64,000 bases of DNA, taken from positions 207,000 to 270,999 of the forward strand of contig NW_018406963.1 of NCBI RefSeq assembly GCF_002113885.1, in the 5' to 3' direction. The notes below the pieces were generated by a model. The model saw only the letters and a program-made list of their open reading frames with translations. It was not told the origin of the DNA and did no database searches. Below, one piece after another: positions 482 through 49,328 of the stretch. The first letter of the stretch is position 1; every line of letters starts with the position of its first letter. Position numbers and translations under genes: made by a program. The DNA comes from Mizuhopecten yessoensis. Its lineage: Eukaryota.

Positions 482-16368
<15,887 letters not shown>

Positions 16369-25598: not shown

Positions 25599-27480
25599 AT
25601 GGCTGAGAGAGGTACTGAGCCACAAAACTGGAGGGATGGTAGGACACTAACACAGTGTAATCGCTACATGCTGGAGCAGGAAATCAGCTGTGATGTGCAC
25701 TTCATAGTCGGACCAAACGACGACCAACAGCGTATTGGCGCTCACAAATACATGCTAATGACCAGGAGTGATGTGTTTTTCGCCATGTTTGAGGGTCTTA
25801 TGGCTGAGGAAAACAGCTTGGTCACAATTCCTGACATTGACCCAACTACCTTCAAGAAAATGTTATTGTAAGTGCTATCAGATATCATTAGATCAGGCAA
25901 ATTTTAATTTTTTGATGATATAAGTGAGGTTTAATACCATTTGTCATTCTATAATATGGGTAATTTCAGTATGAGTCCATATTATGTGTTAGTTTAGTAT
26001 AAATGAGACTATTTTATGGGTTTGTTCAGTAAAAAAATACAAAAAAAAACAGTTCCGTGTAAACAAATTTATATTATAATATGGGCTAAATCATTATGTA
26101 AATGATTCTATCCCAAAGTCGCACCTAAAACCAATTTGAATTTCTAATTCTACTGTATAATGTATATCAAATAATCAAAAGTAAAGAGTAAGTCAGTCCT
26201 GAATCGAGATTTCTGTAACTGCAGGGATTCCAGCGTAGCTTATCTTGTCTTTTATTTTTATTTTTACAACAGGATTGCATCCGTATACCACTGGGTATCC
26301 TCCTGAAACTGAGACATGGGATGTAAACATTCTTGTACACTTATACAACGTTTGTTCACATTATCCATCTACAGAATGTTGTTACATTTAATAGTGGCCA
26401 TTTTAAGCATAATAATAAACATGTTATTTATTATCATCTTACAGGTACATTTACTGTGATGATACAGGAGTAGATACAGACGAAGCCTTTCCTCTGCTGT
26501 ATGCCGCCCAGAAGTACAACATACAGGGCCTGGTAAACCGGTGCGGCCAGCGAATGCGGACGGGAATCTCCAGGGAGAATGTATGCCATATTCTGATAAA
26601 CACATTCCTGTGGCATGAAGAAGAAACAAAACAGGCCTGTGTGCAGTACATCAACCTCCATGCATCGGATGTGTTTTCAACAGAAGGGTTCACAGATTTG
26701 CCAGAAGAATCTCTGATCGAGCTACTGCAACATCACAAGTTAAATATACAAGAAGAGAGAATATTCGAGGCAGTTATAAAATGGGCAGATGAAAAAATCA
26801 AGAGACAAAATTTAAGGGTCGATGCTACCAACAGGCGCAACGCCCTGAACAAAATTCTGCCGCACATTCGTTTTGCAAGAATGGACGTGGCTTACTTCTC
26901 CGATAAGGTCACCCATAAAGGTATTCTGACTACTTCAGAGATTGTTAAGTACTTTCAATTCTTGACCACAAAAAAGGCTGACCCTCCAGAACCTCAGAGA
27001 GAACAGAGACTTGTGTTTGAAAGATTTAAGGGGGTCTTAAGTGGTAAAGGTTATTTCCGTGGCAACACAGACGCTATCTCCTTCATGCTCTCTGAAGATG
27101 CCAAGCTACACGAGGTTTTGGTCTATGGCAGCTGCATGAATCAAGCTTTGTATAAGATGAACCTGAGAGTTCTAGAAGATGGTGGTGCTGAATTGCATTT
27201 GAAGGTATTTGATTTGAGGACTGATGGCTCTACGAAAACCTATCCACTTGGGATAGTGCCTCCTGTTCTGGTGAAAAAAGAAGTCTGCTACTCGTTAGTA
27301 ATGGAAATCACAGGCCCAGCTAGCTACTACGGACAAGATGGAGTTGAAAGTTTGACCAAGGAGGAAGTGACAATAACTTTCTGTACCAATAAAGAAGGAC
27401 TGAATGGCACAAATATCAAACAAGGACAATTCCATAGCTTAGTCTTTGAAAAGATACAGTCAATAATGACTTACAGTTAA
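25599..27480 (+). CDS. BTB/POZ-BACK-PHR protein (BTBD2/3/6-like), paralog 1, 434 aa
   Basis: Exons 25599-25867 and 26445-27480 (phase-2 intron, ORF intact). BTB: CDVHFIVG...IGAHKYMLMTRSDVFFAMFEG; BACK: IQEERIFEAVIKWA...ILPHIRF; PHR: DAISF...GTNIKQGQFHSLVF. Probable 5'UTR exon donor at 24687. Confidence 0.9.
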
Positions 27481-30045: not shown

Positions 30046-32352
30046 ATATATTATACAGCTTCATAGTGTATCTTGATACAATGTCCCTTGTTAACCATTT
30101 TTAGCACTTGGCCATAAGGGCCACGTGAGTTTATGCCATTGCGCCGCAACCGTCAATCCATCTTTTATCTAAAGCGCTACTAGTCCAAAATTGCAAAATG
30201 CAGTTTAACAAAAAATTCTGGAACATCCTTGGATCAACTCCACAGTGTATGAACTGAGATTGTAACTGGGAGCAGAAAAGTGGGGCAAACATGTGAAATG
30301 TTGATAAATCTTTAAAAATCTGCTTATTGTTTAAGGCAAAATGGATTTAAACACAATAATGTAATTTGAAGCATCCGGGGCTTGGTCCAATTAAGATCGG
30401 TGTTGAATAAACGGAGAGTAAGGCCCTCCCAATTAACAGAGCGTGGGTACAGGGCCAAATATTGGAAATATAGGTAAATATTCAGAATCCTATTCCTTAT
30501 GTGCGGAGAAATGTAAGGTATTTCATTCATTTTCCAGCAAGCAAGTCATGATCGATACTGACAACGACTATTATTGATGAAGGCGGTTTTCAAACAAAAA
30601 CTATAACACGAAACAATTAATGTATATAATAATTTATTGATCACATGATTACTTATCACAGAAGACCAATATATACATTTACTGAATAGCCAAAATTTTG
30701 CAATTTCACAAAAGATGATCATCTCTACGAATTGACAAAACATCAGACCACTGACGGAAATAGAACTGACCTGAATCGATATGATTGTTAAAAAATATAT
30801 GAAAAATCATATCTATCATCATCAATATTCTCAACATTCTCCTCGGAAGCCGGAACAAACAATCTGTAAAGAGAAAAATAAAGAGAAAAAAGGTTTATTT
30901 TTTCGTTCTGCGCTTAAGGCCTTACAGAATTTGCTGTATTTTGTTAAATGATTAAAATTACTGTATTATATTTCATAAGTGCTTTAAATCAGTTAATCGT
31001 TAATAGTAAGACTACTAGGAGGTATGGACGGTCGGGGGAGGGACGCATACATTCCGAGCATCAATGGATCTAAAAGTAAGACAGCTAAATAGAAACTACA
31101 CACGAGAGTGTAGCATGGATTCCCCTAAAAATGAGTGTATTACGTCATCACTTCTGGGCCTTTTCCAGACGTACACGTAGGTTGGAACTTGAAGACGGCG
31201 AGCTACACGTAAGTATTAACATGTGGAATATTTATATTAGATTCCATAGTTTATGAATGAAACAACTATTTGTATAAAGTGTTATGATGGTGAGTCTTAT
31301 TGAAAACTATAAACGAGCAATATTTACGTGGGAAATTTGCATTTGAAATAAGGCGCCAATATACACGTAACAGAATCGTCTAGTCATCAGTTTCCGCGCG
31401 TTATGTATTTCCGCGCAGCCATTTTGTCAAGCTATATCTCGTAACTACGTGACCTGCTGGACACAACACAGGGATATTTTAGACGTTTGGCCATCGTCTG
31501 TAAACTGACACAAAAATTACCGGAAGTTCGTTTGGAAAACATAAGAATTAATCACTGATTAAAAAACACGTATGCATATGCAGTTTTGCTTAGTGCACTT
31601 TTTATCTTGCTCAAAATGAGCCCATACCTAAAACAACAGTGATATATTTCATTCATGAACCGGTCTTTTTTGTTGTCTGACAAACGTACGAAAATGTCGT
31701 ATGCAAATGAAGCCACATTTCCTCGCCGATTTTTTTTCCACTTCCGAAGAGCCAATGAGACATTCTTATATCGATAAAATGTAGTTTCAATGAAACGTAA
31801 ACTTTGTAATGCAATGAACTTCCAATTTTCACCAATTTTAAACAGAACAAAATGAGAAATAATTTACCATCAACCAAAACCGATATAAGACTGCAGAAAA
31901 AGAAAAATAATAAATAAATATAAAAAATTACATGAATACATTCCATTTGACATCTTGAAAAATCTATTAAAATGTGAAAAAAAGTTGTTTTGAAAATTAA
32001 TTTGACGAACAAAGGTATGGGTGGGTTTTTTTTAATTTCAAACGAAGCTTTTGTTCTTGCAGGTCACTGTAGAGAGTTTCTATTTAGTGTATTCGAGTTA
32101 TCTTTCTTTGAACACTAAATCAAAATAGACACACGGAATACTTCCGACGGGAGAAATTTGTTAAAAAATGTTTGTTCTGATTTTTTAAAAATACATTTTT
32201 ATTTTGCTAGTTTTTTGTTTCCATTAGTAGATTGTAAACATGTTTATGACAGTCATCCGTAATTTCAACAGTTTCCTGCCGATATGAGTACGAAATCGCG
32301 GATGCTTCTTAAGTGCGCGGAAACCGGTAACCCGAAGATACAATGTCGGTAG

Positions 32353-32542
32353 TGACACAGGGACCTGATAATTTGTTACAGCTATGTTTGATCAAGATCG
32401 ACTTCCGAAATGCCTCCTCTAATGAATAACATAATATACTACATATAACATTATCATACAATCATTGGGGGTGGCGTTTTACCGAAAGTTGATATACGCC
32501 CCTAAAACGTGTAAAATTACAAATAATCAGGTCCCTGTGTCA
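32353..32542. mobile_element. MITE with ~23-bp TIRs
   Basis: tgacacagggacctgataatttg ... caaataatcaggtccctgtgtca. Confidence 0.6.
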
Positions 32543-32835
32543 TTAATATGTACTCATGAAATTTAGTTGGCGTTACTTACAAGTACTCGCACCAACCGTA
32601 AGGTTGATAAACCTCTTTAAAGACAAATATTATTTCATACCAAAGATTTAATATACTGAACGTTATGCGGAAAATATGTGAATACATCAAATCAAACATT
32701 TCCCATTTCAGTCTTAAGAACGGCAAAATTAATGTTTTGCTTTGGTTTAAAATCAATTAATTATTTTAAACGAATATTTTTGTGCTTAAATGGCCGTTTT
32801 CAAAGACTGATTTTTTGCCCCAACAGATTACCTAC

Positions 32836-34686
32836 CTAGCGAGGGACGGGGTACCAGTAGTTGATCTGACGCTGGATGCACAGTGGGAACAGAACCATAT
32901 GTTTCTCCTCAAATTGATCACAGAATCTCCTCTCCCAGTACAGGTCATCCAGTGGCAGCTCCATGGTCAGTTCAAAGGAAAACGCTAGTCCGTAGTTAAA
33001 CAACATCATGGCCTTTGACCGCTCCGCGAAATTGGCTTTGTCCCTCTTACGAGATTTGGATGGCTTCCATAAGCATCTTCTTTTGACCTGACACGGGGCA
33101 GTTCCGCAGTGGCGGCAGATGGAAGGACCTGTGTGTTACGTCAGAGGGAATTGGCTGTACATGTAAATATGTATGCTAGGACAGAAAGAAGGGCCTTTAC
33201 ACTACCAACTAAAAATCAGCATTTAAGGGGAAACTACGAGGTATTACTAACCTATATATGTAATCAATGAAGAAAAGAAAAATGAGAATGCGTAACAATA
33301 ATAAGAAGAAACATTGAGGTGGTCAAGAGACGGAAACGTCTATTAACAGACCGAAACCAGGTAGAATGAGAAAATATGTAATGCATTCCAAAACGCTTCA
33401 AAAGCTGCGATAAGCGGACAAAACGAAAAAGGATTTTTTTTAAGACGGTATTTAAAGACAAAGAATAGCAGAACATATTTTTTCTTCATGCAAACAGCTT
33501 ACTCCATGAAACCATTTGTATATATATATGATACGTGTATCGTCAATAGCAGATACATATTTTGTTGAATTCATTTAATAAGCAACTAGTTTGAAAGGGA
33601 TAGAAGATAATTGCAATCTTTAGGCTGATGAAATATTTGACTGTGAATGGTTGTATTGCCAACAAAAATCCTTAAAAGGAAAAAGTATGTGATGTCAAAT
33701 GCATAACCAGATTAATTATTCAGGAGATACATAATGGTAAATTTTAGTTTTTGCCATATTGGCATATATGTACATTAGACTGAAACGTCTCTTACATTAA
33801 TTTATGTGCTGCATGAGCTTGATGTTTGCATGACCTTTAATCTTTCCGTGCTATTTTACTTTGTATTCAACTATCTGTGATGCATACTACCTTTGTGATA
33901 TTTTGTTGTTTCTATTAATTTTGATTGTTATATGTAGTCGTAAGAATAGCTCTACTGAGCTAATGTTGCATTGTTACAAACACGACTGTAACTAAAAGTT
34001 CTTGTATCTTGTAGGTCTGTATATAACTTACGAGCTCTCCATTCTTGGAACATTGACCATTTCTCTTTGGCGCTTTTCACAATCGACGGCGCAAAGCCAA
34101 ACAGCAGGGCTAGAAGCACACACAGCAGGGTACAAAATACTTCATTTCCAAGTCGCTGAAAGAAATTGAATTAAAATGAGAACTGTATGTTTAACATAAA
34201 TGGAAATTAACGATGTTGCAGATTCACGAGTTCAATCGGGTTTTACATTCCTTATACCAGGCCGAAAAGGTCATACACGGATAAAATGGTATCCTTACCC
34301 ATGTTAGGGTGACAGGCGTTGGACAAACTTTCTCGGCCTGGTTATATCCTGGCTCGGGCTCCACGCTACAGAAAAAAAATGCAAAGTTCAAATTAAATAT
34401 TTCTAGACTTTTACTGACACTATAACAGTATTCCGTCTTTGCGCATTGCAGAGTTATCTGCTCTTGTGAGCAGGTATTGATTATTTCGTCATTTGTTTGT
34501 GAGAGTAACGTCATCAATTTTTGAGAAAACGACGTAACATTATTAACATTAACATGAGCTCCGTTCTGTATAAGTGTAATGTCAAAAAACTACCCAAACT
34601 TACCACGTAAGGTTCCGATATACAGCAGGACCTTGCTGCATGGCGCTCAGCATTACCACCACATATATCAAGAATAACATATTCAT
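32836..34686 (-). CDS. Uncharacterized 188-aa type I membrane protein with a Cys-rich cytoplasmic domain
   Basis: Four GT-AG exons with matching phases (2,0,1): 34686-34604, 34365-34299, 34155-34032, 33128-32836 (TAG). Translation: MNMLFLIYVVVMLSAMQQGPAVYRNLTCVEPEPGYNQAEKVCPTPVTLTWRLGNEVFCTLLCVLLALLFGFAPSIVKSAKEKWSMFQEWRARPSICRHCGTAPCQVKRRCLWKPSKSRKRDKANFAERSKAMMLFNYGLAFSFELTMELPLDDLYWERRFCDQFEEKHMVLFPLCIQRQINYWYPVPR. Confidence 0.8.
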
Positions 34687-34782
34687 TGTGGACAACCTAC
34701 AGTTAATAAAAGATATAAATTTTAGGGGAGAGACTGATCATTTCCGCCTTACCAGTTGCTAAGTAGTTTAGCAACAAGTATG

Positions 34783-34824
34783 TGACGTCACAAATGGCTT
34801 CATTGCTTTACCATCATGACGTCA
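34783..34824. promoter_or_regulatory. Two perfect CRE/ATF palindromes upstream of the minus-strand membrane-protein gene
   Basis: TGACGTCA at 34783-34790 and 34817-34824, ~100-140 bp upstream of the ATG. Confidence 0.35.
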
Positions 34825-35144
34825 TGCTAAGTTTTTGTCACAACGTCAAAAGTTGAATCGAAGACACCTACGCCGAATACTGTTCTCAATTTTTCATTTG
34901 ACCGTTTGATTGTTTTACACGATTTAGATGAGACACAAGAAAGTTTGTTTGAGTATATAATCCATGCTTGAGCAGAAGAACGTCCTTTAACACCCGGAAA
35001 ACTATTATATCGTACGGACCGTTTTTAATGTTAGACAAGACATGACATCACTGGTCATTTCGATAAAATATGATTGAGAAATGCTTTTTTATATTTGATA
35101 GGTTAATCCCTTTATCTCACCAGTTTAGTAGAGACAGCCTCTTC

Positions 35145-35660
35145 CGTTTGAGATACTTCTATATACCCATAGGGACATGTCACAGATCCCCAACCCCACG
35201 GGCTGTATATGCGGACCGTGTGGTTATGAATCTGTGTCACGTCCCTTTATATATGAACATATAGCCTTGTCGGGTCTATTTCTTGGAACATCATTCCACA
35301 GTGGTTTCGACAGAGTCGTTCATACATGTACTTTCCATCATCAGAATGTTCGTCATCTTTCTTCTTTTATTGGGAGATTCCCCCTAATTGTTATAGCGGA
35401 GGAGTGACCGGGGTTCGTAACAGGGACCTACGAACTCTACACGGACGCCTGAAGCAATTGAACTATTTCATCGCCCGCGATCTACCAAGTCCAGTTTCGC
35501 TTAATTCATTTCTCACTCCTTTATCACAGAGTCTTTGCCCTTGGAAATAACATTATGTGCACTGTCTTCGTAAAAACACTGTAACAGAAGAAGAGAAATG
35601 CACAGCCACACCGGGATTCGGTCCCGGGACCTCCGAACTCTAGACGGACGCTAGCGCTCT
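35145..35660 (-). mobile_element. Interspersed repeat containing two tandem pseudo-tRNA units
   Basis: Minus-strand A/B-box-like units at 35407-35465 (tagttcaattg...gttacgaaccccggt) and 35608-35660 (...ggaccgaatcccggtgtg). Confidence 0.5.
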
Positions 35661-35867
35661 AGGTACCTACATTGCTAAGGAAATCCACCATGTTGTTTCC
35701 TAATGCGCTCCTTGTTGTTTGATATGTTTTGTCGTTCTTTCCTGTACATGTCTGCTTACTGTTGTATTGGTGGAGGTGTCTGGATGGTTAGTATAAGCTT
35801 GTCTTGTGATTCGGTGATGAAGAGTATGTCGTCAGGTTCTGAGCCTGTCAGAGTCGTACGGGAAGCG

Positions 35868-36169: not shown

Positions 36170-36499
36170 CTATATGAAAGGTTGTATTTTGAGACTAATC
36201 TTATTCAAGATATATAAACAAGTACGAAATAATCTTTTTTGATGTAAAGATATGCAGATGTTGCTGATTCTGTATTGTATTTTATCCTTATTTGTCCACA
36301 TTTGTCCACTTTTTGTCAACATTTTGTCCACTATTTTTCCACATTTGTCCTTTTTTGTCCACTATTTGTCCACATTGGTCCGCATTTGTCAACTATTTGT
36401 CCTTATTTGTCCTCTTTTTGTACACATTTGTCCACTTTTTGTCCGCTTTTGTCCATATTTGTCCACTATTTGTCCTCATTCGTCATCATGAATCTCCAT
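36170..36499 (-). pseudogene. Polinton accessory ORF remnant with 7-aa repeats (tttgtccac tandem repeat, 36285-36480)
   Basis: 110 codons from ATG to TAG in one frame with 3 internal stops: GQIVDKY/GQKRTKS/GQMCTKR/GQIRTNS... Confidence 0.45.
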
Positions 36500-37256: not shown

Positions 37257-38503
37257 GCGCTGTAATCGAATTAAAACTGTCTGTTGTGGTCGATTTCTAT
37301 GATGTTGTCAAACTCTGTATACACTATGACGTTGACCGTCGCTGTTAAAATCGCATTGAAATGAAGTTGTAGACTCATGTTTCCGCTTTTTATGAGATGA
37401 AATGTGCCCATCTCCGACAGGTCGGGCGTGAGGTCAAATCCGAACAGGGTGTATCCTTTCCCGAATTCATCTCGAGGCACATTGTTTCCCTCGTCGTTGT
37501 AAATTTTACCCGTGCTCGTATAGAGATTCATGTAAATGCGTACGTACTGACCGTTCGTGAAGTCCGGCTGTAATGGCTTGGCGGGAATTTGTTTCCCGTC
37601 CACATTAAGACACACGTAATCGACATTGTAGTGTTTGAAATTGAAAGGATTTTTGGTGGCGGTACCGTCAAACGCGTCCGTATCGACCAAGCCCAGGACG
37701 ATCTTCTCGGGCATCTGTCCTATGAACAGGTTGTCCTTGGTAAAGTCAATGTTACCTCGAGGCACGGACGTCACTTTCATTTCTATTCTCCGTATTGGAT
37801 ACTTAGCGGGAGTTTTTTTCCATGGCTCTTGCTTGAGCAACGCAAACGGTCGGATTCAAACGCACTTTCCTTGAGTACAGACAGATATCTTGCACGACCG
37901 CTTCAAACGTGTCGCCTGCTGAACGCGTCCTTACTGCGTGACATGTTTATTTCCACGTCGACGTTGTTGACTAAGTATCGTTCCTTTGTAAACACGTCCG
38001 AATGGATTTTCCCAATCAAATCGACGGTGCGACTTCGTCATCGCTTTCTTCGCAACGTATCCCAAGTTTTCGGCGCCCTGAGTGTCCATTTCACCTGCGG
38101 TGTCGTTGTACCACATGGCGCCTGTCAGTTGAGAGTCTTTAGCTGCGGGCCCGTATAACTTAACAGGGTTTCGATGTACGCTCTGTACGGATAGGCATTG
38201 TCGGGCGGAGACACCAGCTTTTCGTTTAGACTGACACTCACGTTATTGAACAGCAAATGAAGGATTAAATTCGACGGAGCTACGTTCGAATCATCCTCTA
38301 GGGCGGCACCGTCGGCTTTCTTTACTAACTGTACTTTCACGAACAGGTTTGTGTCCCCATGTCTAAGTAATCTTCTCCGGATCCAGATATCTGAAACGTG
38401 TACGGATCTCCGTCGTTGACACTCGTCTGGGTGGGAGGTACGTCAAACAGATAAAATTCGGATTTCGCGCATTCGTACACGAATTCGGATGAACTTACGA
38501 CAT
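37253..38503 (-). pseudogene. Polinton major capsid protein (double jelly-roll, hexon/PY), disabled
   Basis: N-terminus MS*VHPNSC/ECAKSEFYLFDVPPTQTSV; internal YPYRAYIETLLSY; C-terminal half AKYPIRRIEMK...KNPFNFKHY...GYTLFGFDLTPDL...EFDNIIEIDHNRQ; multiple frameshifts and stops. Confidence 0.92.
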
Positions 38504-38589: not shown

Positions 38590-38886
38590 CTAAAAAGTCG
38601 CACTTCCGGCGTTGCGAGCCCTAGACAACGCTGCAGTTTTGATATTCTTGCCGTCTATGACGTCGCCTGGCATTGCCATACCCGTTTTTAGAGCCTGTGT
38701 TCCTAATGACTTCGCACCTCTTTTTAACAATGGGGCTGCAGCCTTAAATAAACCGCTGAATATCGAACCCAGATCTTGACCTCTCGGCATTCGACTTCCG
38801 GCGAAAACGTTGTTTCCGCTTCCGGCTTGATCGAGATAATACCGATCGAACACGTAAGGATCGCTTCTGTGTGGAGGATGTCTCAT
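38590..38886 (-). pseudogene. Polinton small core / membrane-active protein (adenovirus pX/pVI-like position)
   Basis: YYLDQAGSG...FAGSRMPRGQDLGSIFSGLFKAAAPLLKRGAKSLGTQALKTG...DVIDGKNIK; lies between penton and major capsid. Confidence 0.7.
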
Positions 38887-38971
38887 CTTGAAGTTATTGA
38901 AATATTGTCGTAGATGTTCGCGGATCACTGCAGATTGCTGTTGATTACTGTCGTTTCGACTCGTATAATTT

Positions 38972-39572: not shown

Positions 39573-40029
39573 TGATTTCGTTAGGGAATTAATACGGAAT
39601 TCAGTGTATCTCTGTGTGGGAATTAAGTATGTTTTTGTCCAAGGTGAGCGAGACTATATTGTTGAATAAATGTTTGTTCTGTAGTGACTGAGATTTTACG
39701 ACATTCAATTACACCGATAACCTAAGACCATGCAGTGAGTATTCTCATTTACCTACCTTATCCGACGTATCCGTTGGGTCAAAGATTCTCGATGACTGTC
39801 CGATGATCAACTGTGAACTCAAAGGACACATCCGATATTTTAAACTCTGTCACACATACACAAAATATAAACACAATGATTAATTAAAGTATGTCCCAAA
39901 ACAGCGTGCCTACTCTCTGACGTTCCCCCCAAGGCTGGCTACAAATCAAAAGATTAAGGTGCTTGTTATTACTTTCTGGTATTTTAAGATATAACGTCAT
40001 ATCTATTTCTATATTCACCGGACGAAACA

Positions 40030-40314
40030 GATGAATGTATGCAAATTAGGATAGCGCATCCGGTTTAGCCTGGCAGACTTGGGTTTTTCCTGAAGGTCAC
40101 ACGTTATTCAAATGCAAATTTGGGTTTTTTCCGTGATGTCACCTCATACGGTTTTTCCAATGACGTAACACTCTATTCGAGGATTGTTTTTTCCCCATAT
40201 CTCATTAATAAGCATATAACCACGTCCCTCATATGCAAATTAGGCCAGGCTTATCCTGCTTTTCCACCCAGGCGCAACTAGACATGTGCCTCCTGTACGT
40301 ACTATACTACTACT
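40030..40314. repeat. Polinton terminal repeat core ending in ACTACTACT (5'-AGTAGTAGT on the minus strand)
   Basis: Partial direct copies at 41446-41569 and ~41697-41744, inverted copy at 41776-41900; short tandem-trinucleotide end typical of protein-primed replicons. Confidence 0.7.
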
Positions 40315-41445
40315 TCCTCCCAATCCGCTCCTTAGCGGACTTCCTCCCCCATCCGTTCCTAAGAGATTTTCCCCATCCACACGTTAAAGGACTTCCTCCA
40401 CCTCTACTCCTTAGAGGATTTCCTCCCCATCCACACCTGAGAGGACTTCCTCCAACTCTGCTCCATAGAGGACTTCCTTCCCCATCCGCACCTTAGAGGA
40501 CTTCATCCACCTCCACTCCTTAGAGGACTACCTCGCCATCCAAACTTCAGAGGACTTCATCCACCTCCCCTCCGTATAGGACTTCCTCCCCATCCGCAAC
40601 TTAGAGGACTTCCTTTCCAATCCGCTCTTTGGAGGACTTCCTCTCCTATCCGCACCTTAGAGGTTTTCCTCCCAATCCGCATATTAGAGGACTTTCTCCA
40701 CCTCCGCTCCTTAAAGGACTTCCTCTCTCATCCGCTCTTTGGAGGACTTCCTCTCCATCCGCACATTAGAGGACTTCCTCCCCCATCCGCACCTTAGAGG
40801 ACTTCTTTCACCTCCACTCCTTAGGGGACTTCCTCCTCAATCCGCACCTTAGAGGACTTCTTCTCCCATCCGCAACTTAGAGGACTTCCTCTACTATCCG
40901 CACCTCAGAGGTTTTTCTCCCCATCCGCATTTTAGAGGACTTCCTCCAACTCCGGTCCTTAGAGGACTTCCTCCAACTCCGCACATTAGAGGACTTCCTC
41001 CACATCCGCTCCTTAGAGGACTTCCTCCCCCATCCGCACCTTAGAGGACTTCCTTTCCCATCCGCACCTTAGATGACTTCCTCCCCATCTGCACCTTAGA
41101 GGACTTTCTCCAACTTCGCACCTTAGAGGACTTCCTTTCCCATCCGCACCTTAGAGGACTCCTCTCCTATCCGCACCTTAGAGGTTTTCCTCCCCATCTG
41201 CACATTAGAGGACTTCCTCCACCTTCGCTCATTAGAGGACTTCCTCCCCCATCCGCAACTTAGAAGACTTCCTCTCCCATCCGCACCTTAGAGGACAACT
41301 CCCATCTGTACCTTAGAGGACTTCATCCAACTCCGCTCCTTAGAGTACTTCCTCCCCATCCGCACAATATAGGACCTCCTCCCCCATCTGCACCTTAGAT
41401 GACTTCCTCCCCCATCTGCACCTTAGAGGACTTCCTCCCCCATCC
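40315..41445 (+). repeat. 29-30 bp satellite, ~38 copies
   Basis: Unit CCCCATCCGCACCTTAGAGGACTTCCT(C). Confidence 0.95.
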
Positions 41446-42803
41446 ACACGTCATTCAAGTTTAAATTTGGTTTTTTTCCGTGATGTCACCTCTTACGGTT
41501 TTCCAATGACGTTACATTCTATTCTAGGATTGGTTTTTCCCATATCTCATAAGTAAGCATATAACCACGATTCTCCAAAACGATTCCGAATATATTCAAC
41601 TAACGTTTAGATAGCAACAGAACACGCAATATTTTATTTTTAGACTATACGACGTCCCTTCATTGAAATTGCCGTTACGTCACAAATCTTGGGGATTTTC
41701 CACGACACCCCGGCGCAGCTAGACATGTGACTCCTGTGCGTACAATGCGGTTATAGACACTGTGTACATGATGTCCATTGGAAAAACTGTATGAGGTGAC
41801 ATCACGGAAAAAACCCAAATTTGCATTTGAATGACGTGTGACCTCAAGGAAAAACCCAAGTCTGCCAGGCTGAGCCGGCTGCGCTACCCTAATTTGCATA
41901 AGAATGATATGATGTTATGATGTACGTAGAAATAGACAGCGCTGTACGTATACAGCGCGCAGGTATAGAAAGCGACTAGGGTATTCCGAGTGATACGCTC
42001 GAGTTCGGTATTGTACATGTCTGGCTAACTAACGTCACACTGACAGTTCATTATGACTGTATACCAGTCTAACACATTTATTAATTGATATAATAACTGT
42101 AGTTGATATTGAACATGTCCAAACACGTTAGCTTTGCAGGTCACGGTGTGTATGGACACGTACACAGTGTCTATTACCGCAGTGTTTTTATTAATGTCTA
42201 TTTTTAGACATATGTTTTGTACTGAGTTGTAACAGTATACGAATAAGTTATAGAGCTGTGTAGGGCCGGCTGTGTATTCTATACAAAGTATCTGCAGCTT
42301 GACGAATACTAATATTATCTTTTTAACAGTTCAAATTTTCGTATTTACTGTAAGATTCTGAATACCTAACGTCCCGAAAAACAAAACGAGTCAAGCCTCC
42401 TTCGATCGATTTGGTATCGATGACCCATCAGTAAGCACAAGTGTGGACTACGAACAGACACACATAAACCCTAAATAAAACAAAACAAATCAAGCCTCGC
42501 CCGATCGGATTGAAGCAGTGGTATTGGTGACTCCTCAGTACACACATCAACACACACATGAACCTTAAAATCCTACACTATGAACATTTATTATTGATTA
42601 TAGTCTATCAGAGTTGTGTTGCTATTTTTACGTGTACAATCACAGTACGCCCATATTCAATGTATAGTCAACTTTATAAATACACGTATACTCTCAAAAA
42701 CTATCATTCGATATTACGTTGTGTAAAGATTTTTTCTTATGATAAACTGTTTTTCAATATATATTTTATTTCATTCTTATATTTTTTCTCAACTCCTCCA
42801 CAG

Positions 42804-45915: not shown

Positions 45916-48900
45916 ATGGCTTCGGGAGGAGATGAGCCTCAGGACTGGAGAGATAATAAGAGTTTGGTACAATGCAACCGCTACATCTTGGAACAGGAAA
46001 TTGGCTGTGATGTTCGTTTTGAGGTCGGAGAGGGAGATAACCAAAAAAGTATGGCGGCTCACAAGTCCCATTTAATGGCAAGAAGTGATGTGTTCTTTGC
46101 CATGTTTGAGGGACCCATGGCTGAACCAAATAGCATGATACAAATACCGGATATTGAGCCAGTCACCTTCAAGTTGATGTTACAGTAAGTATATCTGCAT
46201 TTTGTTTTCAGAAAGAAAAACAAAAACATGCATCAATGTCATTCATGACGTAACAGGACTATAGCAATATTTACTGCCTCGAGTATTTAATTAAATAATG
46301 GACATTTCGACAAAATCCCTTAATAAGTTTATTAGGTAAAACTACAACTTGAAATCCTACCTTAGAATGACATTTCAATTCGCCTCTGGAGTGCAGAGTA
46401 AGTGAAATAGGTCAAAGATACCTATACTTTGATATTTGACCTTAACCTCTGTCAAAGTCTGTCTGCATATCTTCTATACTATTTCACATGGAGTAACCAG
46501 ATGAGGTACATATATGCAGGTACATCTTGGGATCGCAGAGTGCAGAATATGAGTAGTAGGTCACTGACCTTTGACCTTAACCTTTAAAAAGGATTGTCCT
46601 CAGCATATCTTTTATTTTATTTCACAAAGATTAACCAAATTCAGTGTGCATGTAATCCATGTATCTTATGGTGGTGGAGTGCAGTGTATGAAAAGTACAG
46701 TAGTTCACTGTAATCTATGTTTTGACCTCTAACCTCAGTCAGTAATTTAAACAGTTTATACAGAGCATATCTCATCAAAAATGATTTCACCTGGAGTATT
46801 AAACCAGATTTGGTATGCAACTACATCTTGGGATTTCAACAGATGGAGTGCAGAATATGAGAAGTAGGTTACTGTGACCTGTGCTTTGGCCTTTGATCCT
46901 ACCCTTTGTGCATTTTTTTCGCAAGCATGTCACTTTAATCTATTTCACCAGGATAAACCAAATTTAGTATGCAGTTACAGTAAATCTTGAAATGGGGGAG
47001 TACAGTTTAGGAAAAGTAGGTGACTGTAATTACTGTCAAAAACTTCAAACTACTTCTTCTGAAGAACTGAAAGGCCTAGAACCATGATATTTCTTCTGGT
47101 AGCTTCCTAGTTTGGAGTCTTTGTTACAAAGTTTGTTAATATATAAGGCCATTACTTATTTTCAAGATCAAAGTGGCCAACTTATTCTGAAGAACTGAAA
47201 AGCCGATGATTATGAAATTTGACTGGTAGCTCCCTTGAATGGAGCCTGACAATTTAGTTTGCTAACAAAAATGACCTTGAGCTATTTTTGAGGTCACAGG
47301 AATCAAATATGTCAAAAGTTTCAAAACAATTTCTTTTGAAGAACCCATATACTTAATCAAAGTGTATAGTATGCGGCAGGTCTTAACTTAAAATAACAAA
47401 TTCCAGGTGAGCTATTAAGGCCCATTGGCCTCTTGTTAAACGAATATATATTTATTTTCTATATTAAATTTCTTTGAAGTAACAAAATTTGGTATGCAGG
47501 CCAAGTATATCAAAATAAACTGTACCAAAAGCAAGTCACTGTAATATTTAGTTGATACTTTCTTTACATAAGGTTGATACTTCCTTTACATAAGGTTGAT
47601 ACTATCTTTACATTAAGTTGATACTATCTTTACTTAAGGTTGATACTTCCTTTACATAAGGTCGATACTATCTTTACATAAGGTTGATACTATCTTTACA
47701 TTAAGTTGATACTATCTTTACATTAAGTTGATACTTTCTTTACATTAAGTTGATACTATCTTTACATAAGGTTGATACTATCTTTACATTAAGTTGATAC
47801 TATCTTTACATAAGGTTGATACTATCTTTACATAAGGTTGATACTTTCTTTACATACGGTTGAGACTATCTTTACATAAGGTTGATACTATCTTTACATA
47901 AGGTTGATACTATCTTTGTTAACCCTAAGATAGGTGTACTATCTTTGTTAACCCTGAGATAGGTGTACTATCTTTGTAAACCCTGAGATAGGTGTACTAT
48001 CTTTGTTAACCCTGAGATAGGTGTACTATCTTTGTTAACCTTGAGATAGGTGTACTATCTTTGTTAACCCTGAGATAGGTGTACTTTCTTTGTTTACCCT
48101 GAGATAGGTGTACTATCTTTGTAAACCCTGAGATAGGTGTACTATCTTTGTTAACCCTGAGATAGGTGTACTATCTTTGTTAACCCTGAGATAGGTGTAC
48201 AGCTCAGTAAGAAAAGAAATCATTATGGGTTGCCTTGATATACTTTGTGTTAATATTCTTTTTTTTAACGTAAATTTCTTTATTTTTAATAAAAAAATAC
48301 TATTTACTTACAGGTTTATTTACTGTGACGATAACAAAATAGACTTAGTGGATTCCTTTCCTCTCCTGTATGCAGCTCAGAAGTACAACTTAAAAGGCCT
48401 AGCTGTCAAATGTGTCCAGCGCATACGACAGGGAATATCATCGGACAAGGTTTGCTGGATATTCATGCATGGTTGTATTTGGTCCCAGGACGAGGTCAAA
48501 GATCTCTGTATGAAGCACATCATTCACCACTCCTATGCCGTGTTTGGTTCAAAGGGATTCCTCGACATGTCGGAGGAAAGTCTGATTGAGATTCTCAAGA
48601 ACGGGAGGCTCAACATGGAGGAGAAAGACATATTTGAAGCTGTTGTTAAATGGGCCAGAAGAAAATGCAGAACGGAAAACAACCGTGGAAATTTGCGCAA
48701 TGCCTTGGTTAATATTTTGCCACATATTCGATTTGCGAGAATGGAGCTATCATATTTTTCTGAAAAAGTCTCTCACATGGATATCCTGACTCCAGAAAGA
48801 CTTGTCGAAACTTTTCGATTCTTAACCAGCAGGAAGGCAGACCATCCAGATCAACCCAGGGATAGGAGAATCATTTTTGAGAGATTCACAAGAGTGAAGA

Positions 48901-49328
48901 GCGGCAAAGGCTATTTCCGAGGCAATGCGGATGCTATCTCTTTCATGCTTTCAGAAGATGCAAGATTGCATGAGGTGTTGGTCTATGGGAGCTGTCAGTC
49001 TGAAGGTTTATATAAAATAGATATTAAGGTTATAGAAGACGGGGATCGACAGTTGTGTCGGAAGCAGATTGATCTTGAAACAGATGGATTCACGAAGACC
49101 TACCCAATCGAGATAGCGCCCCCGATGATGATGAGCAAAAATATGTGCTACACTTTGTTGATGGTGATGGTAGGGCCAGCCAGTTACTTTGGAGAGAAAG
49201 GGGTGATCGCGAAACAACAGGAAGGGCTTACAATAACTTTTCTACCCAATGAAAAGGGATTGAATGGCACAAACATCAAACAAGGCCAATTCAATAGCTT
49301 AGTATTCAAGAAAACTCGGTCGAGGTAG
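45916..49328 (+). CDS. BTB/POZ-BACK-PHR protein (BTBD2/3/6-like), paralog 2, 427 aa
   Basis: Exons 45916-46184 and 48314-49328; same intron position and phase as paralog 1; intact ORF; probable 5'UTR exon donor at 44643. Confidence 0.9.
47550..48200 (+). repeat. Two abutting minisatellites (22-bp, then 29-bp unit)
   Basis: TAAGGTTGATACTATCTTTACA x~16 (to ~47915), then ACTATCTTTGTTAACCCTGAGATAGGTGT x~10. Confidence 0.93.

What the first reader, a model, noticed from the sequence alone, without database searches (positions are those of the whole stretch)
32836..34686. Hidden spliced gene: mini-ectodomain type I membrane protein with a P2X7-ballast/KolX-like Cys domain
Seen: four exons with canonical GT-AG sites and matching phases join into an uninterrupted 188-aa ORF. 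The ORF track misses it apart from one exon fragment. Architecture: hydrophobic signal peptide; ~35-aa ectodomain with an N-glycosylation sequon (NLT) and two Cys; one TM helix (FCTLLCVLLALLFGFAPSIV); basic linker; cytoplasmic CxxC-x3-PC...W...N..R...DDxY.xR...FPxC.....I..WYPxP domain. From memory of the families: a CxHC..PC start with a PxC...(I/V)R..(Y/F)P end marks small Zn-binding proteins that travel with invertebrate DNA transposons and resemble the P2X7 C-terminal ballast domain and Kolobok KolX. Inference: a transposon accessory domain domesticated by fusion to a membrane anchor, independently of P2X7, giving a candidate undescribed receptor or adaptor. It sits between two BTB-PHR (Cullin-3 adaptor-type) genes.
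Basis: partly seen in the sequence, partly recalled or inferred. Interest (0 to 1): 0.82.

Follow-up and report, generated by a model that had tools for sequence, protein, structure and literature searches.

The report
Scallop-only small membrane protein gene
This is a real, expressed scallop gene for a small single-pass membrane protein. It is one of about fifty copies of a scallop-only family with a cysteine-rich tail of unknown function, and no test supported kinship of that tail with the P2X7 "ballast" or KolX transposon domain.

Summary
The four-exon, 188-aa ORF on the minus strand (32836-34686) is real. All splice sites are GT-AG, and RNA-seq reads or contigs from three studies cross all three predicted junctions. 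They also show a non-coding 5' exon.

The gene is not hidden. It matches RefSeq "uncharacterized protein LOC110453329 isoform X1" of Mizuhopecten yessoensis (192 aa, which is MLST plus the model). It is not single-copy either. The tail exon occurs at 67 places in this genome, about 51 of them full length and about 45 intact. The copies share the exon layout, but their DNA similarity is confined to exons, and dN/dS is 0.2-0.46. Relatives occur only in scallops (Pecten, Ylistrum, Argopecten), plus one marine-metagenome fragment.

The ballast/KolX inference is unsupported:
- Pfam P2RX7_C gives no hit.
- A profile search of the PDB gives no hit.
- hhalign gives 1.5% probability, no better than column shuffles.

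Only a motif-level resemblance remains, and the tail has four invariant Cys, not seven. The BTB-BACK-PHR neighbours are real but incidental. The scan reached the same conclusion on another paralog (s1-514835).

The parts
35671..35770 (-). Exon 0, a 5' non-coding exon. Its 3' end at 35671 is firm. Its 5' end near 35770 is approximate. It holds upstream ATGs, and its last two bases (AT) start the RefSeq start codon.
   Evidence: an X1 contig joins 35671 to 34696 (skips 974, GT..AG on the minus strand). There is depth in bin 35626-35776 and none in the next bin; the sequence at the junction.
34604..34696 (-). Exon 1. It has a 10-nt 5' UTR, then the family-conserved ATG at 34686, and encodes the signal peptide (residues 1-27 plus 2 nt).
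   Evidence: junction reads on both sides; paralogs start at the equivalent Met.
34428..34537 (.). A copy of a ~110-bp high-copy interspersed repeat inside intron 1. It is not part of the protein.
   Evidence: RNA depth in the thousands, with loose ends at 34428/34429 and 34537; at least 704 first-look candidates genome-wide at 93-97% identity.
34299..34365 (-). Exon 2, the ectodomain core (VEPEPGY...KVCPTPVTLTW). It is 30 nt shorter than in the paralogs.
   Evidence: 8 and 6 junction reads in X23; alignment with 13 paralogs.
34032..34155 (-). Exon 3: the end of the ectodomain, the TM helix (V56-V76) and the basic juxtamembrane stretch.
   Evidence: hydropathy 2.44; junctions.
32836..33128 (-). 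Exon 4 (stop included): the 96-aa cytoplasmic Cys domain. C96, C99, C104 and C175 are the family-invariant Cys.
   Evidence: invariant columns; AlphaFold pLDDT 89.7; dN/dS 0.20.
32695..32835 (-). Start of the 3' UTR. Its extent is uncertain.
   Evidence: DNA similarity to the closest paralogs L002 and L004 runs on to about 32695-32706. RNA contig depth in bin 32757-32907.
26554..27480 (+). Neighbour: the BACK+PHR exon of a BTB-type gene.
   Evidence: PHR 1.4e-21, BACK 1.6e-14.
48195..49328 (+). Neighbour: the BACK+PHR exon of a paralogous BTB-type gene.
   Evidence: PHR 2.5e-19, BACK 2.2e-12.

Best explanation
The locus is a functional, transcribed, five-exon gene with four coding exons. It is already modelled in RefSeq as the uncharacterized LOC110453329 of the Yesso scallop.

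It encodes a ~190-aa type I single-pass membrane protein made of:
- a cleavable signal peptide;
- a short ectodomain stub with two conserved Cys, inferred to form a disulfide;
- one TM helix;
- a polybasic juxtamembrane segment;
- a 96-aa cytoplasmic domain.

In the cytoplasmic domain an N-terminal CxxCx4C knuckle and a C-terminal FPxC cysteine are invariant. I infer that they hold one zinc ion that clamps a four-helix module.

The gene is one member of a Pectinidae-restricted family that evolves by birth and death, with about 50 full-length copies in this genome. The whole protein is under purifying selection, strongest on the tail.

Most likely mode of action (inference, not shown): a membrane-anchored adaptor or accessory subunit. 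The conserved stub would contact an extracellular or membrane partner. The zinc-stabilised tail and its polybasic linker would recruit a cytoplasmic partner or the inner leaflet.

The tail is best treated as an uncharacterised domain of its own, not as a demonstrated P2X7-ballast/KolX derivative.
For: Gene model and ORF.

Splicing and transcription: three independent studies.

Identity with RefSeq: P0040 equals the model plus MLST.

Family size and layout:
- 68 and 67 places in the genome.
- Paralog loci keep the exon 1-4 order with variable introns.
- DNA similarity is limited to exons.

Taxonomic range: only Mizuhopecten, Pecten, Ylistrum and Argopecten, plus one Tara Oceans fragment. This comes from an exhaustive phmmer of 1.84e9 representatives and a profile search of 5.8e9 proteins.

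Selection: dN/dS medians are 0.20 (tail), 0.41 (ectodomain exon) and 0.46 (TM exon), with almost no pairs above 1.

Invariant Cys: C4, C7 and C12 of the domain are invariant, and C83 is nearly so.

Structure:
- The confident model has pLDDT 89.7 and pTM 0.81, an N-terminal loop and four helices.
- It has no neighbour in PDB, BFVD or the ESM Atlas.

Tree: old shared lineages plus species-specific expansions.
Against: - Zinc binding, the disulfide, signal-peptide cleavage and topology are inferred from sequence only. No SignalP or DeepTMHMM was available, and I could not inspect the model coordinates to see whether the four Cys converge.
- The adaptor mechanism has no direct evidence. There is no partner, no tissue pattern (run identities are coded) and no literature on any family member.
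- This copy lacks 10 conserved ectodomain residues and 4 juxtamembrane residues, so it could be a functionally drifting member.
- RNA depth in the raw-read runs is low: a few to about ten reads per junction at about 18% sampling.
Confidence: 0.8

Rival explanations
1. The tail is a strongly reduced descendant of the ballast/ZCD domain (KolX-derived). It would have kept only Cys cluster 2 and the C-terminal PxC...I...(Y/F)P motif and so bind one zinc instead of two. This is the reader's domestication idea, but at the root of a scallop family and not in one gene.
For: - With realignment, hhalign pairs C..CGTAPC with CCGQTPC, and FPLCIQRQINYWYP with PPSCVVARIRWRYP, collinearly.
- By direct count, the spacing from the CG..PC cysteine to the PxC cysteine is 76 residues both here and in the genuine scallop ZCD protein P0056.
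- P, C, I and (Y/F)P of ZCD motif 3 fall at identical spacing (motif from PMC7016195).
- PMC9587614 reports piggyBac-borne proteins resembling the KolX C-terminal part that lack most of the seven Cys, so reduced versions exist.
- Both domains are C-terminal and cytoplasmic.
Against: - Pfam P2RX7_C gives no hit at E up to 10 for this protein or eight relatives.
- Its genome-wide scan finds 37 true ZCD exons, none at a family locus.
- The family profile finds nothing in the PDB at E up to 10, whereas the scallop ZCD protein P0056 finds P2X7 at 8e-8.
- hhalign gives 1.5% probability. The score of 17.0 is matched by 11 of 150 column shuffles, and the C-terminal half alone by 95 of 150.
- The tail has four invariant Cys, against seven or eight in ZCD.
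- Motif 1 (PxWCxCx2C) and the Yx(S/T)G tail are absent.
- The model is helices only.
Confidence: 0.13
2. The copies are cargo or genes of a mobile element, so this is an ordinary transposon gene and not a host gene.
For: There are many dispersed copies (67-68 places on more than 45 contigs). Interspersed repeats lie in and near the gene.
Against: - Copies share only exon sequence, the last ~160 bases of the intron upstream of exon 1, and, for the closest pairs, part of the 3' UTR. Introns differ in length and sequence, and there are no shared termini.
- dS between copies is 0.2-0.7 with dN/dS of 0.2, which means old, selected duplicates and not a recent burst.
- Several copies are local tandem clusters.
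- Lineages are shared across genera.
- No transposase-like ORF was detected beside the gene.
Confidence: 0.03
3. Same protein, different mechanism. The tail is released by regulated proteolysis and acts in the nucleus or on nucleic acids, and is not a membrane adaptor.
For: An NLS-like polybasic run (KRR...RKRDK) follows the zinc knuckle directly. It is conserved across the family. Small Cys4 knuckles often bind nucleic acids (general knowledge).
Against: No DNA- or RNA-binding family matched in Pfam. No structural match to nucleic-acid-binding folds was found. Polybasic juxtamembrane stretches are equally typical of inner-leaflet lipid binding.
Confidence: 0.1

Closest known systems
RefSeq/UniProt 'uncharacterized protein' family of Pectinidae (e.g. 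LOC110440346, LOC110454337 of Mizuhopecten yessoensis; LOC117328195 of Pecten maximus; LOC132546350 of Ylistrum balloti; Argopecten irradians XP_069122647.1)
   Same: Same exon layout: signal peptide, CVEPEPGY...C ectodomain, TM helix, and CxxCGxxPC...FPLCIQRQINYWYPVPR tail. Identity is 55-92% in the tail. The window's product is itself in the database as LOC110453329 isoform X1.
   Different: This copy is 188/192 aa against the usual 202. It has a private 10-aa ectodomain deletion, a 4-aa juxtamembrane deletion and a private NLT sequon.
P2X7 cytoplasmic ballast / Zn-coordinating Cys domain (Pfam PF20478 P2RX7_C; PANTHER PTHR36981; NANOR; Kolobok KolX)
   Same: Both are C-terminal, cytoplasmic and Cys-bearing, of roughly 95-115 aa. 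There is a motif-level likeness of CGxxPC and PxC(I/V)x3I(R/N)x2(Y/F)P with equal 76-residue spacing.
   Different: No HMM, profile-profile or structural similarity was found. The tail has 4 invariant Cys, not 7-8. The PxWCxCx2C cluster and the Yx(S/T)G end are missing. ZCD proteins are reported to lack TM regions outside P2X7 (PMC7016195). The scallop's own ZCD genes split the domain with an intron, whereas here it is one exon.
Generic small single-pass adaptor or accessory subunits with tiny ectodomains (by analogy only, from general knowledge)
   Same: Overall plan: a short disulfide-bearing stub, one TM helix and a conserved cytoplasmic module. The family is multi-copy.
   Different: There is no sequence or fold relationship to any of them. 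No signalling motif such as ITAM was recognised. This analogy was not tested with tools.

Membership tests
P2X7 ballast / ZCD (PF20478, PTHR36981) | Scores above the Pfam P2RX7_C gathering threshold (23.5 bits) | tested here: not met
   There was no hit at E up to 10 for exon 4 or for 8 family proteins. The genome-wide PF20478 scan gives 37 matches, none at a family locus.
P2X7 ballast / ZCD (PF20478, PTHR36981) | Cys cluster 1: PxWCxCx2C (PMC7016195) | tested here: not met
   The sequence shows (P/R)SxCRHCGTAPC only. There is no WCxC and no third cluster upstream; the preceding residues are the juxtamembrane stretch.
P2X7 ballast / ZCD (PF20478, PTHR36981) | Cys cluster 2: LCCRx3GxC | tested here: inconclusive
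   hhalign pairs HCGTAPC with the scallop ZCD's CCGQTPC over 6 columns. The CC doublet is absent, and the match is not significant.
P2X7 ballast / ZCD (PF20478, PTHR36981) | Cys cluster 3: (L/I/V)PSC(C/S)x3IRx2(F/Y)Px5Y(S/T)G | tested here: inconclusive
   FPLCIQRQINYWYP shares P, C, I and YP at the same spacing. It has L for S and N for R, and the protein ends 3 residues later without Yx(S/T)G. For the C-terminal half, 95 of 150 column shuffles reach the hhalign score.
P2X7 ballast / ZCD (PF20478, PTHR36981) | Seven or eight conserved Cys coordinating a dinuclear zinc site | tested here: not met
   Only four Cys are invariant or nearly invariant across 38 domain sequences. C18 and C70 of this copy are variable.
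P2X7 ballast / ZCD (PF20478, PTHR36981) | Ballast fold | tested here: not met
P2X7 ballast / ZCD (PF20478, PTHR36981) | Guanosine-nucleotide pocket | not tested
   I had no residue list in hand, because the primary structure paper is not held.
Kolobok KolX (transposon-encoded) | Encoded inside a TIR-bounded Kolobok element next to a DDD/E transposase | tested here: not met
   Copies are intron-bearing and alike only in exons. No transposase domain was found in neighbouring ORFs.
Pectinidae ~200-aa type I membrane protein family (unnamed) | Four coding exons in the order signal / ectodomain / TM / tail | tested here: met
   and for this copy's junctions.
Pectinidae ~200-aa type I membrane protein family (unnamed) | Conserved ectodomain C...VEPEPGY...C-P and tail CxxCx4C...FPxCIQ...WYPxP | tested here: met
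   Alignment A2 and alignment A3. E-value to the family profile is 1.1e-85.

The most novel reading that the evidence does not exclude
The tail is a previously undescribed zinc-clamped four-helix fold that defines a scallop-specific family of membrane adaptors. Alternatively, and more strikingly, it is an extreme mononuclear reduction of the KolX/ballast domain. That would be a second fusion of this transposon-derived module to a membrane protein, independent of vertebrate P2X7.
Probability: 0.13. Interest if true: 0.7.

Novelty: new variant of a known kind. Interest (0 to 1): 0.33.

Why it matters
On its own the locus is an ordinary member of a lineage-specific gene family that RefSeq already models. 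Two things are worth noting.

Second, the ballast/KolX story (P2X7 arose by capture of a transposon protein) invites a search for other captures. This case shows that motif-level resemblance is not enough. It also sets out what test would settle the question.

Tried and rejected
- Pfam on each exon by reference: only sub-threshold noise.
- Pfam on eight relatives: nothing relevant.
- Profile against PDB sequences: blank.
- ESM Atlas by features for the tail and for P0001: no usable hit.
- First AlphaFold run with 19 same-genome paralogs gave pLDDT 54 and was discarded. The second run, with 38 sequences from four genera, gave 89.7.
- Fold searches in PDB (Foldseek, VIA wide, VIA second look), BFVD and the Atlas found no neighbour.
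- I tried to widen a ZCD alignment through the search for homologous proteins with the scallop ZCD ORF. It gave one hit only, so the ZCD profile used for hhalign is shallow (9 sequences).
I redid it from references (between).
- The McCarthy 2019 P2X7 structure paper is not held, so the Zn-ligand and GDP-pocket residues were taken only as summarised in PMC7016195 and PMC9587614.
- A literature search for six family LOC identifiers found no papers.
- Co-location with BTB-PHR genes across the family: rejected. PHR genes and family members share no contig other than the window's own.
- Diversifying selection on the ectodomain: rejected. Omega is 0.41, with 1% of pairs above 1.
- Joined-model searches: I sent no typed or joined model to any search tool. 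Exons were searched by reference, and the database protein P0040 served as the reference for the whole product.

Full report
**Observation.**
On the minus strand, exons 34686-34604, 34365-34299, 34155-34032 and 33128-32836 are each bounded by GT and AG. Joined in a script from window.fa, they give 567 nt, or 188 codons plus a stop. The mechanical ORF list shows only a 57-aa fragment of the last exon.

Hydropathy gives a 12-residue N-terminal hydrophobic core and one strong TM peak (KD 2.44 over CTLLCVLLALLFGFAPSIV), followed by basic residues.

**Transcription and splicing.**
I laid two transcriptome-sized contig sets (X1, X2) and two raw RNA-seq runs (X20, X23) on window:31700-36200. All three predicted junctions appear:
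- 34032/33128: X1 and X2 contigs, and 10 X23 reads from 6 starts.
- 34299/34155: 8 X23 reads.
- 34604/34365: 6 X23 reads, 1 X20 read, and an X1 contig whose 8 loose letters are the start of exon 2.

An X1 contig also joins 34696 to 35671.

Reads had to be at least 95% alike, and the nearest paralog is 91% identical in exon-4 DNA, so the reads belong to this locus. One fixed difference (33098 G>A, giving A102V in the CGTAPC knuckle) looks like a strain polymorphism, because V occurs there in paralogs.

**Identity.**
An exhaustive phmmer of the tail exon against 1.84 billion representatives found nine proteins. The named ones are 'uncharacterized' proteins of Mizuhopecten yessoensis, Pecten maximus and Argopecten irradians.

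Searching with the 202-aa paralog P0001 returned 43 proteins from those species and Ylistrum balloti, none with a Pfam domain. One of them, P0040 (LOC110453329 isoform X1, 192 aa), is exactly MLST plus my 188-aa model. Its start codon is split AT|G across the exon 0/exon 1 junction. The family-conserved start is the ATG at 34686.

The gene is thus annotated, not hidden.

Exons were searched by reference, and P0040 served as the reference for whole-protein steps.

**Copy number and nature of the copies.**
The tail exon matches 68 places in the genome with the single sequence and 67 with the family profile. About 51 are full length and about 45 have no stop. There is a sharp score boundary and no intermediates.

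In 19 paralog loci the four coding exons lie in the same order with variable intron lengths. DNA similarity to the window is confined to four places:
- the exons;
- the last ~160 bases of the intron upstream of exon 1;
- the exon 2 acceptor region;
- the 3' UTR, for the closest copies only.

Nei-Gojobori dN/dS among paralogs has these medians:
- 0.20 for the tail (153 pairs, dS 0.19-0.67);
- 0.41 for the ectodomain exon;
- 0.46 for the TM exon.
About 1% of pairs exceed 1 in each of the ectodomain and TM exons.

A maximum-likelihood tree of 35 proteins shows lineages shared between genera plus species-specific expansions: nine Mizuhopecten, six Ylistrum and three Argopecten. This is a birth-and-death host gene family, not a set of transposon copies.

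A profile search of 5.8 billion proteins adds only one outsider, a 142-aa ORF on a 625-bp Tara Oceans metagenome contig.

**The tail domain.**
Across 38 sequences the invariant columns include C4, C7 and C12 (CxxCx4C), R36, L47, F80, P81, I84 and P93. C83 is nearly invariant. The His of EEKHM and the other two Cys of this copy are variable.

With this alignment AlphaFold2 gives pLDDT 89.7 and pTM 0.81, with an N-terminal loop and helices at 32-54, 61-67, 74-79 and 82-91. The 19-sequence alignment had given only 54.

I infer a single Cys4 zinc site tying the knuckle to the last helix. I could not inspect the coordinates, so this remains an inference.

No structural neighbour was found:
- Foldseek against PDB: best E 6.3.
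- ESM Atlas: TM at most 0.46.
- BFVD: best E 2.8.

**Ballast/KolX test.**
- The ballast Zn-coordinating Cys domain has three Cys clusters. They are PxWCxCx2C, LCCRx3GxC, and (L/I/V)PSC(C/S)x3IRx2(F/Y)Px5Y(S/T)G. It is found in short, TM-less invertebrate proteins (PMC7016195).
- KolX of Kolobok transposons has the same fold, with seven conserved Cys (PMC9587614).

For this family every test was negative:
- Pfam P2RX7_C gives no hit at E up to 10.
- Its genome-wide scan finds 37 genuine ZCD exons, none at a family locus.
- The family profile finds nothing in PDB sequences, while a genuine scallop ZCD protein finds P2X7 at 8e-8.
- hhalign against a nine-sequence scallop ZCD alignment gives 1.5% probability.
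- In a column-shuffle control, 11 of 150 shuffles reach the observed score for the whole domain and 95 of 150 for the C-terminal half.

What remains is a collinear motif likeness, CGxxPC ... PxC(I/V)x3I(R/N)x2(Y/F)P, with the same 76-residue spacing. I read that from the sequences myself, after the fact, and it has no statistical support. I give true but very remote kinship about 13%.

**Surroundings.**
ORFs 26554-27480 and 48195-49328 (plus strand) carry BACK and PHR domains, so the neighbour claim holds. Of 32 PHR matches genome-wide, none shares a contig with a family member other than the window's own contig. The juxtaposition is therefore incidental.

**Earlier scan notes.**
A follow-up on another paralog in this genome (s1-514835) reached the same conclusions: a real gene, a family of about 55, and no support for ballast kinship. 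My tests were run independently and agree. The difference is that this copy is annotated.

**Verdict.**
This is an ordinary member of an uncharacterised, scallop-restricted membrane-protein family whose tail may be a new small zinc-stabilised fold.

Noticed in passing
window 34428-34537 (intron 1): A ~110-bp interspersed repeat with at least 704 first-look candidates genome-wide at 93-97% identity. At many other loci it abuts an inverted partial copy, which looks foldback/MITE-like. It is very abundant in RNA runs, where reads show 'opposite strands' joints that come from other copies.
   Followed up: partly
window 32355-32390: A second short repeat just downstream of the gene. It shows a sharp RNA depth peak (bin 32304-32454), many loose ends on both sides and a T>G variant at 32369. 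The reads clearly come from other copies.
   Followed up: no
window 35671-35770 (exon 0): The 5' exon holds two upstream ATGs. The proximal one opens a uORF in another frame that runs into exon 1. The RefSeq start codon is split AT|G over the intron, whereas paralogs start at the ATG equivalent to 34686.
   Followed up: partly
window 34299-34365 and 34032-34155: This copy alone lacks 10 conserved ectodomain residues (the ..RLFxYFTAxE.. block) and 4 juxtamembrane residues (SAAV-like). It alone also has the NLT sequon.
   Followed up: yes
window 33098: G>A in all RNA reads of X23 and in an X1 contig. It changes A102 to V in the CGTAPC knuckle, a residue seen in paralogs. It is probably a strain polymorphism.
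   Followed up: partly
window 34697-34853: About 160 bases upstream of exon 1 (here the end of intron 0) are conserved at 72-84% in many paralogs. This may be the ancestral proximal promoter or 5' UTR.
   Followed up: no
ORFs 37271-37840(-), 37589-38158(+) and 38590-38928(-) gave no Pfam hit. I only observed this and went no further.
   Followed up: no
window 36281-36484: A tandem array of a ~10/21/31-bp unit (TTTGTCCAC-like), about 19 copies, between the gene's 5' exon and the putative viral fossil.
   Followed up: no
window 4001-6000 and 40001-42000: Two GC-rich 2-kb bins (0.49 and 0.48 against about 0.36) with strong opposite GC skew (+0.49 and -0.33).
   Followed up: no
L029, L030, L031 (G000 C3828, C5386, C4827): Near-identical ZCD C-terminal exons (LPACAVTxIRNAFPAPDGQYNGFKFE). 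They look like copies of one mobile element carrying a KolX-like gene.
   Followed up: no
P0008 (ENA contig, 362 aa) and L033/P0009 (Tara Oceans ERZ907774): P0008 is a tandem repeat of a CPSHCETAAWKIPKRCFWNPLKTKK unit that weakly matches the knuckle and polybasic part six times. P0009 is the only family-like sequence not labelled as a scallop.
   Followed up: partly
G000 C3636:116926-117054 (same contig, about 90 kb before the window): An isolated fragment matching tail residues 1-43 at 60% identity. It is probably a decayed paralog.
   Followed up: no
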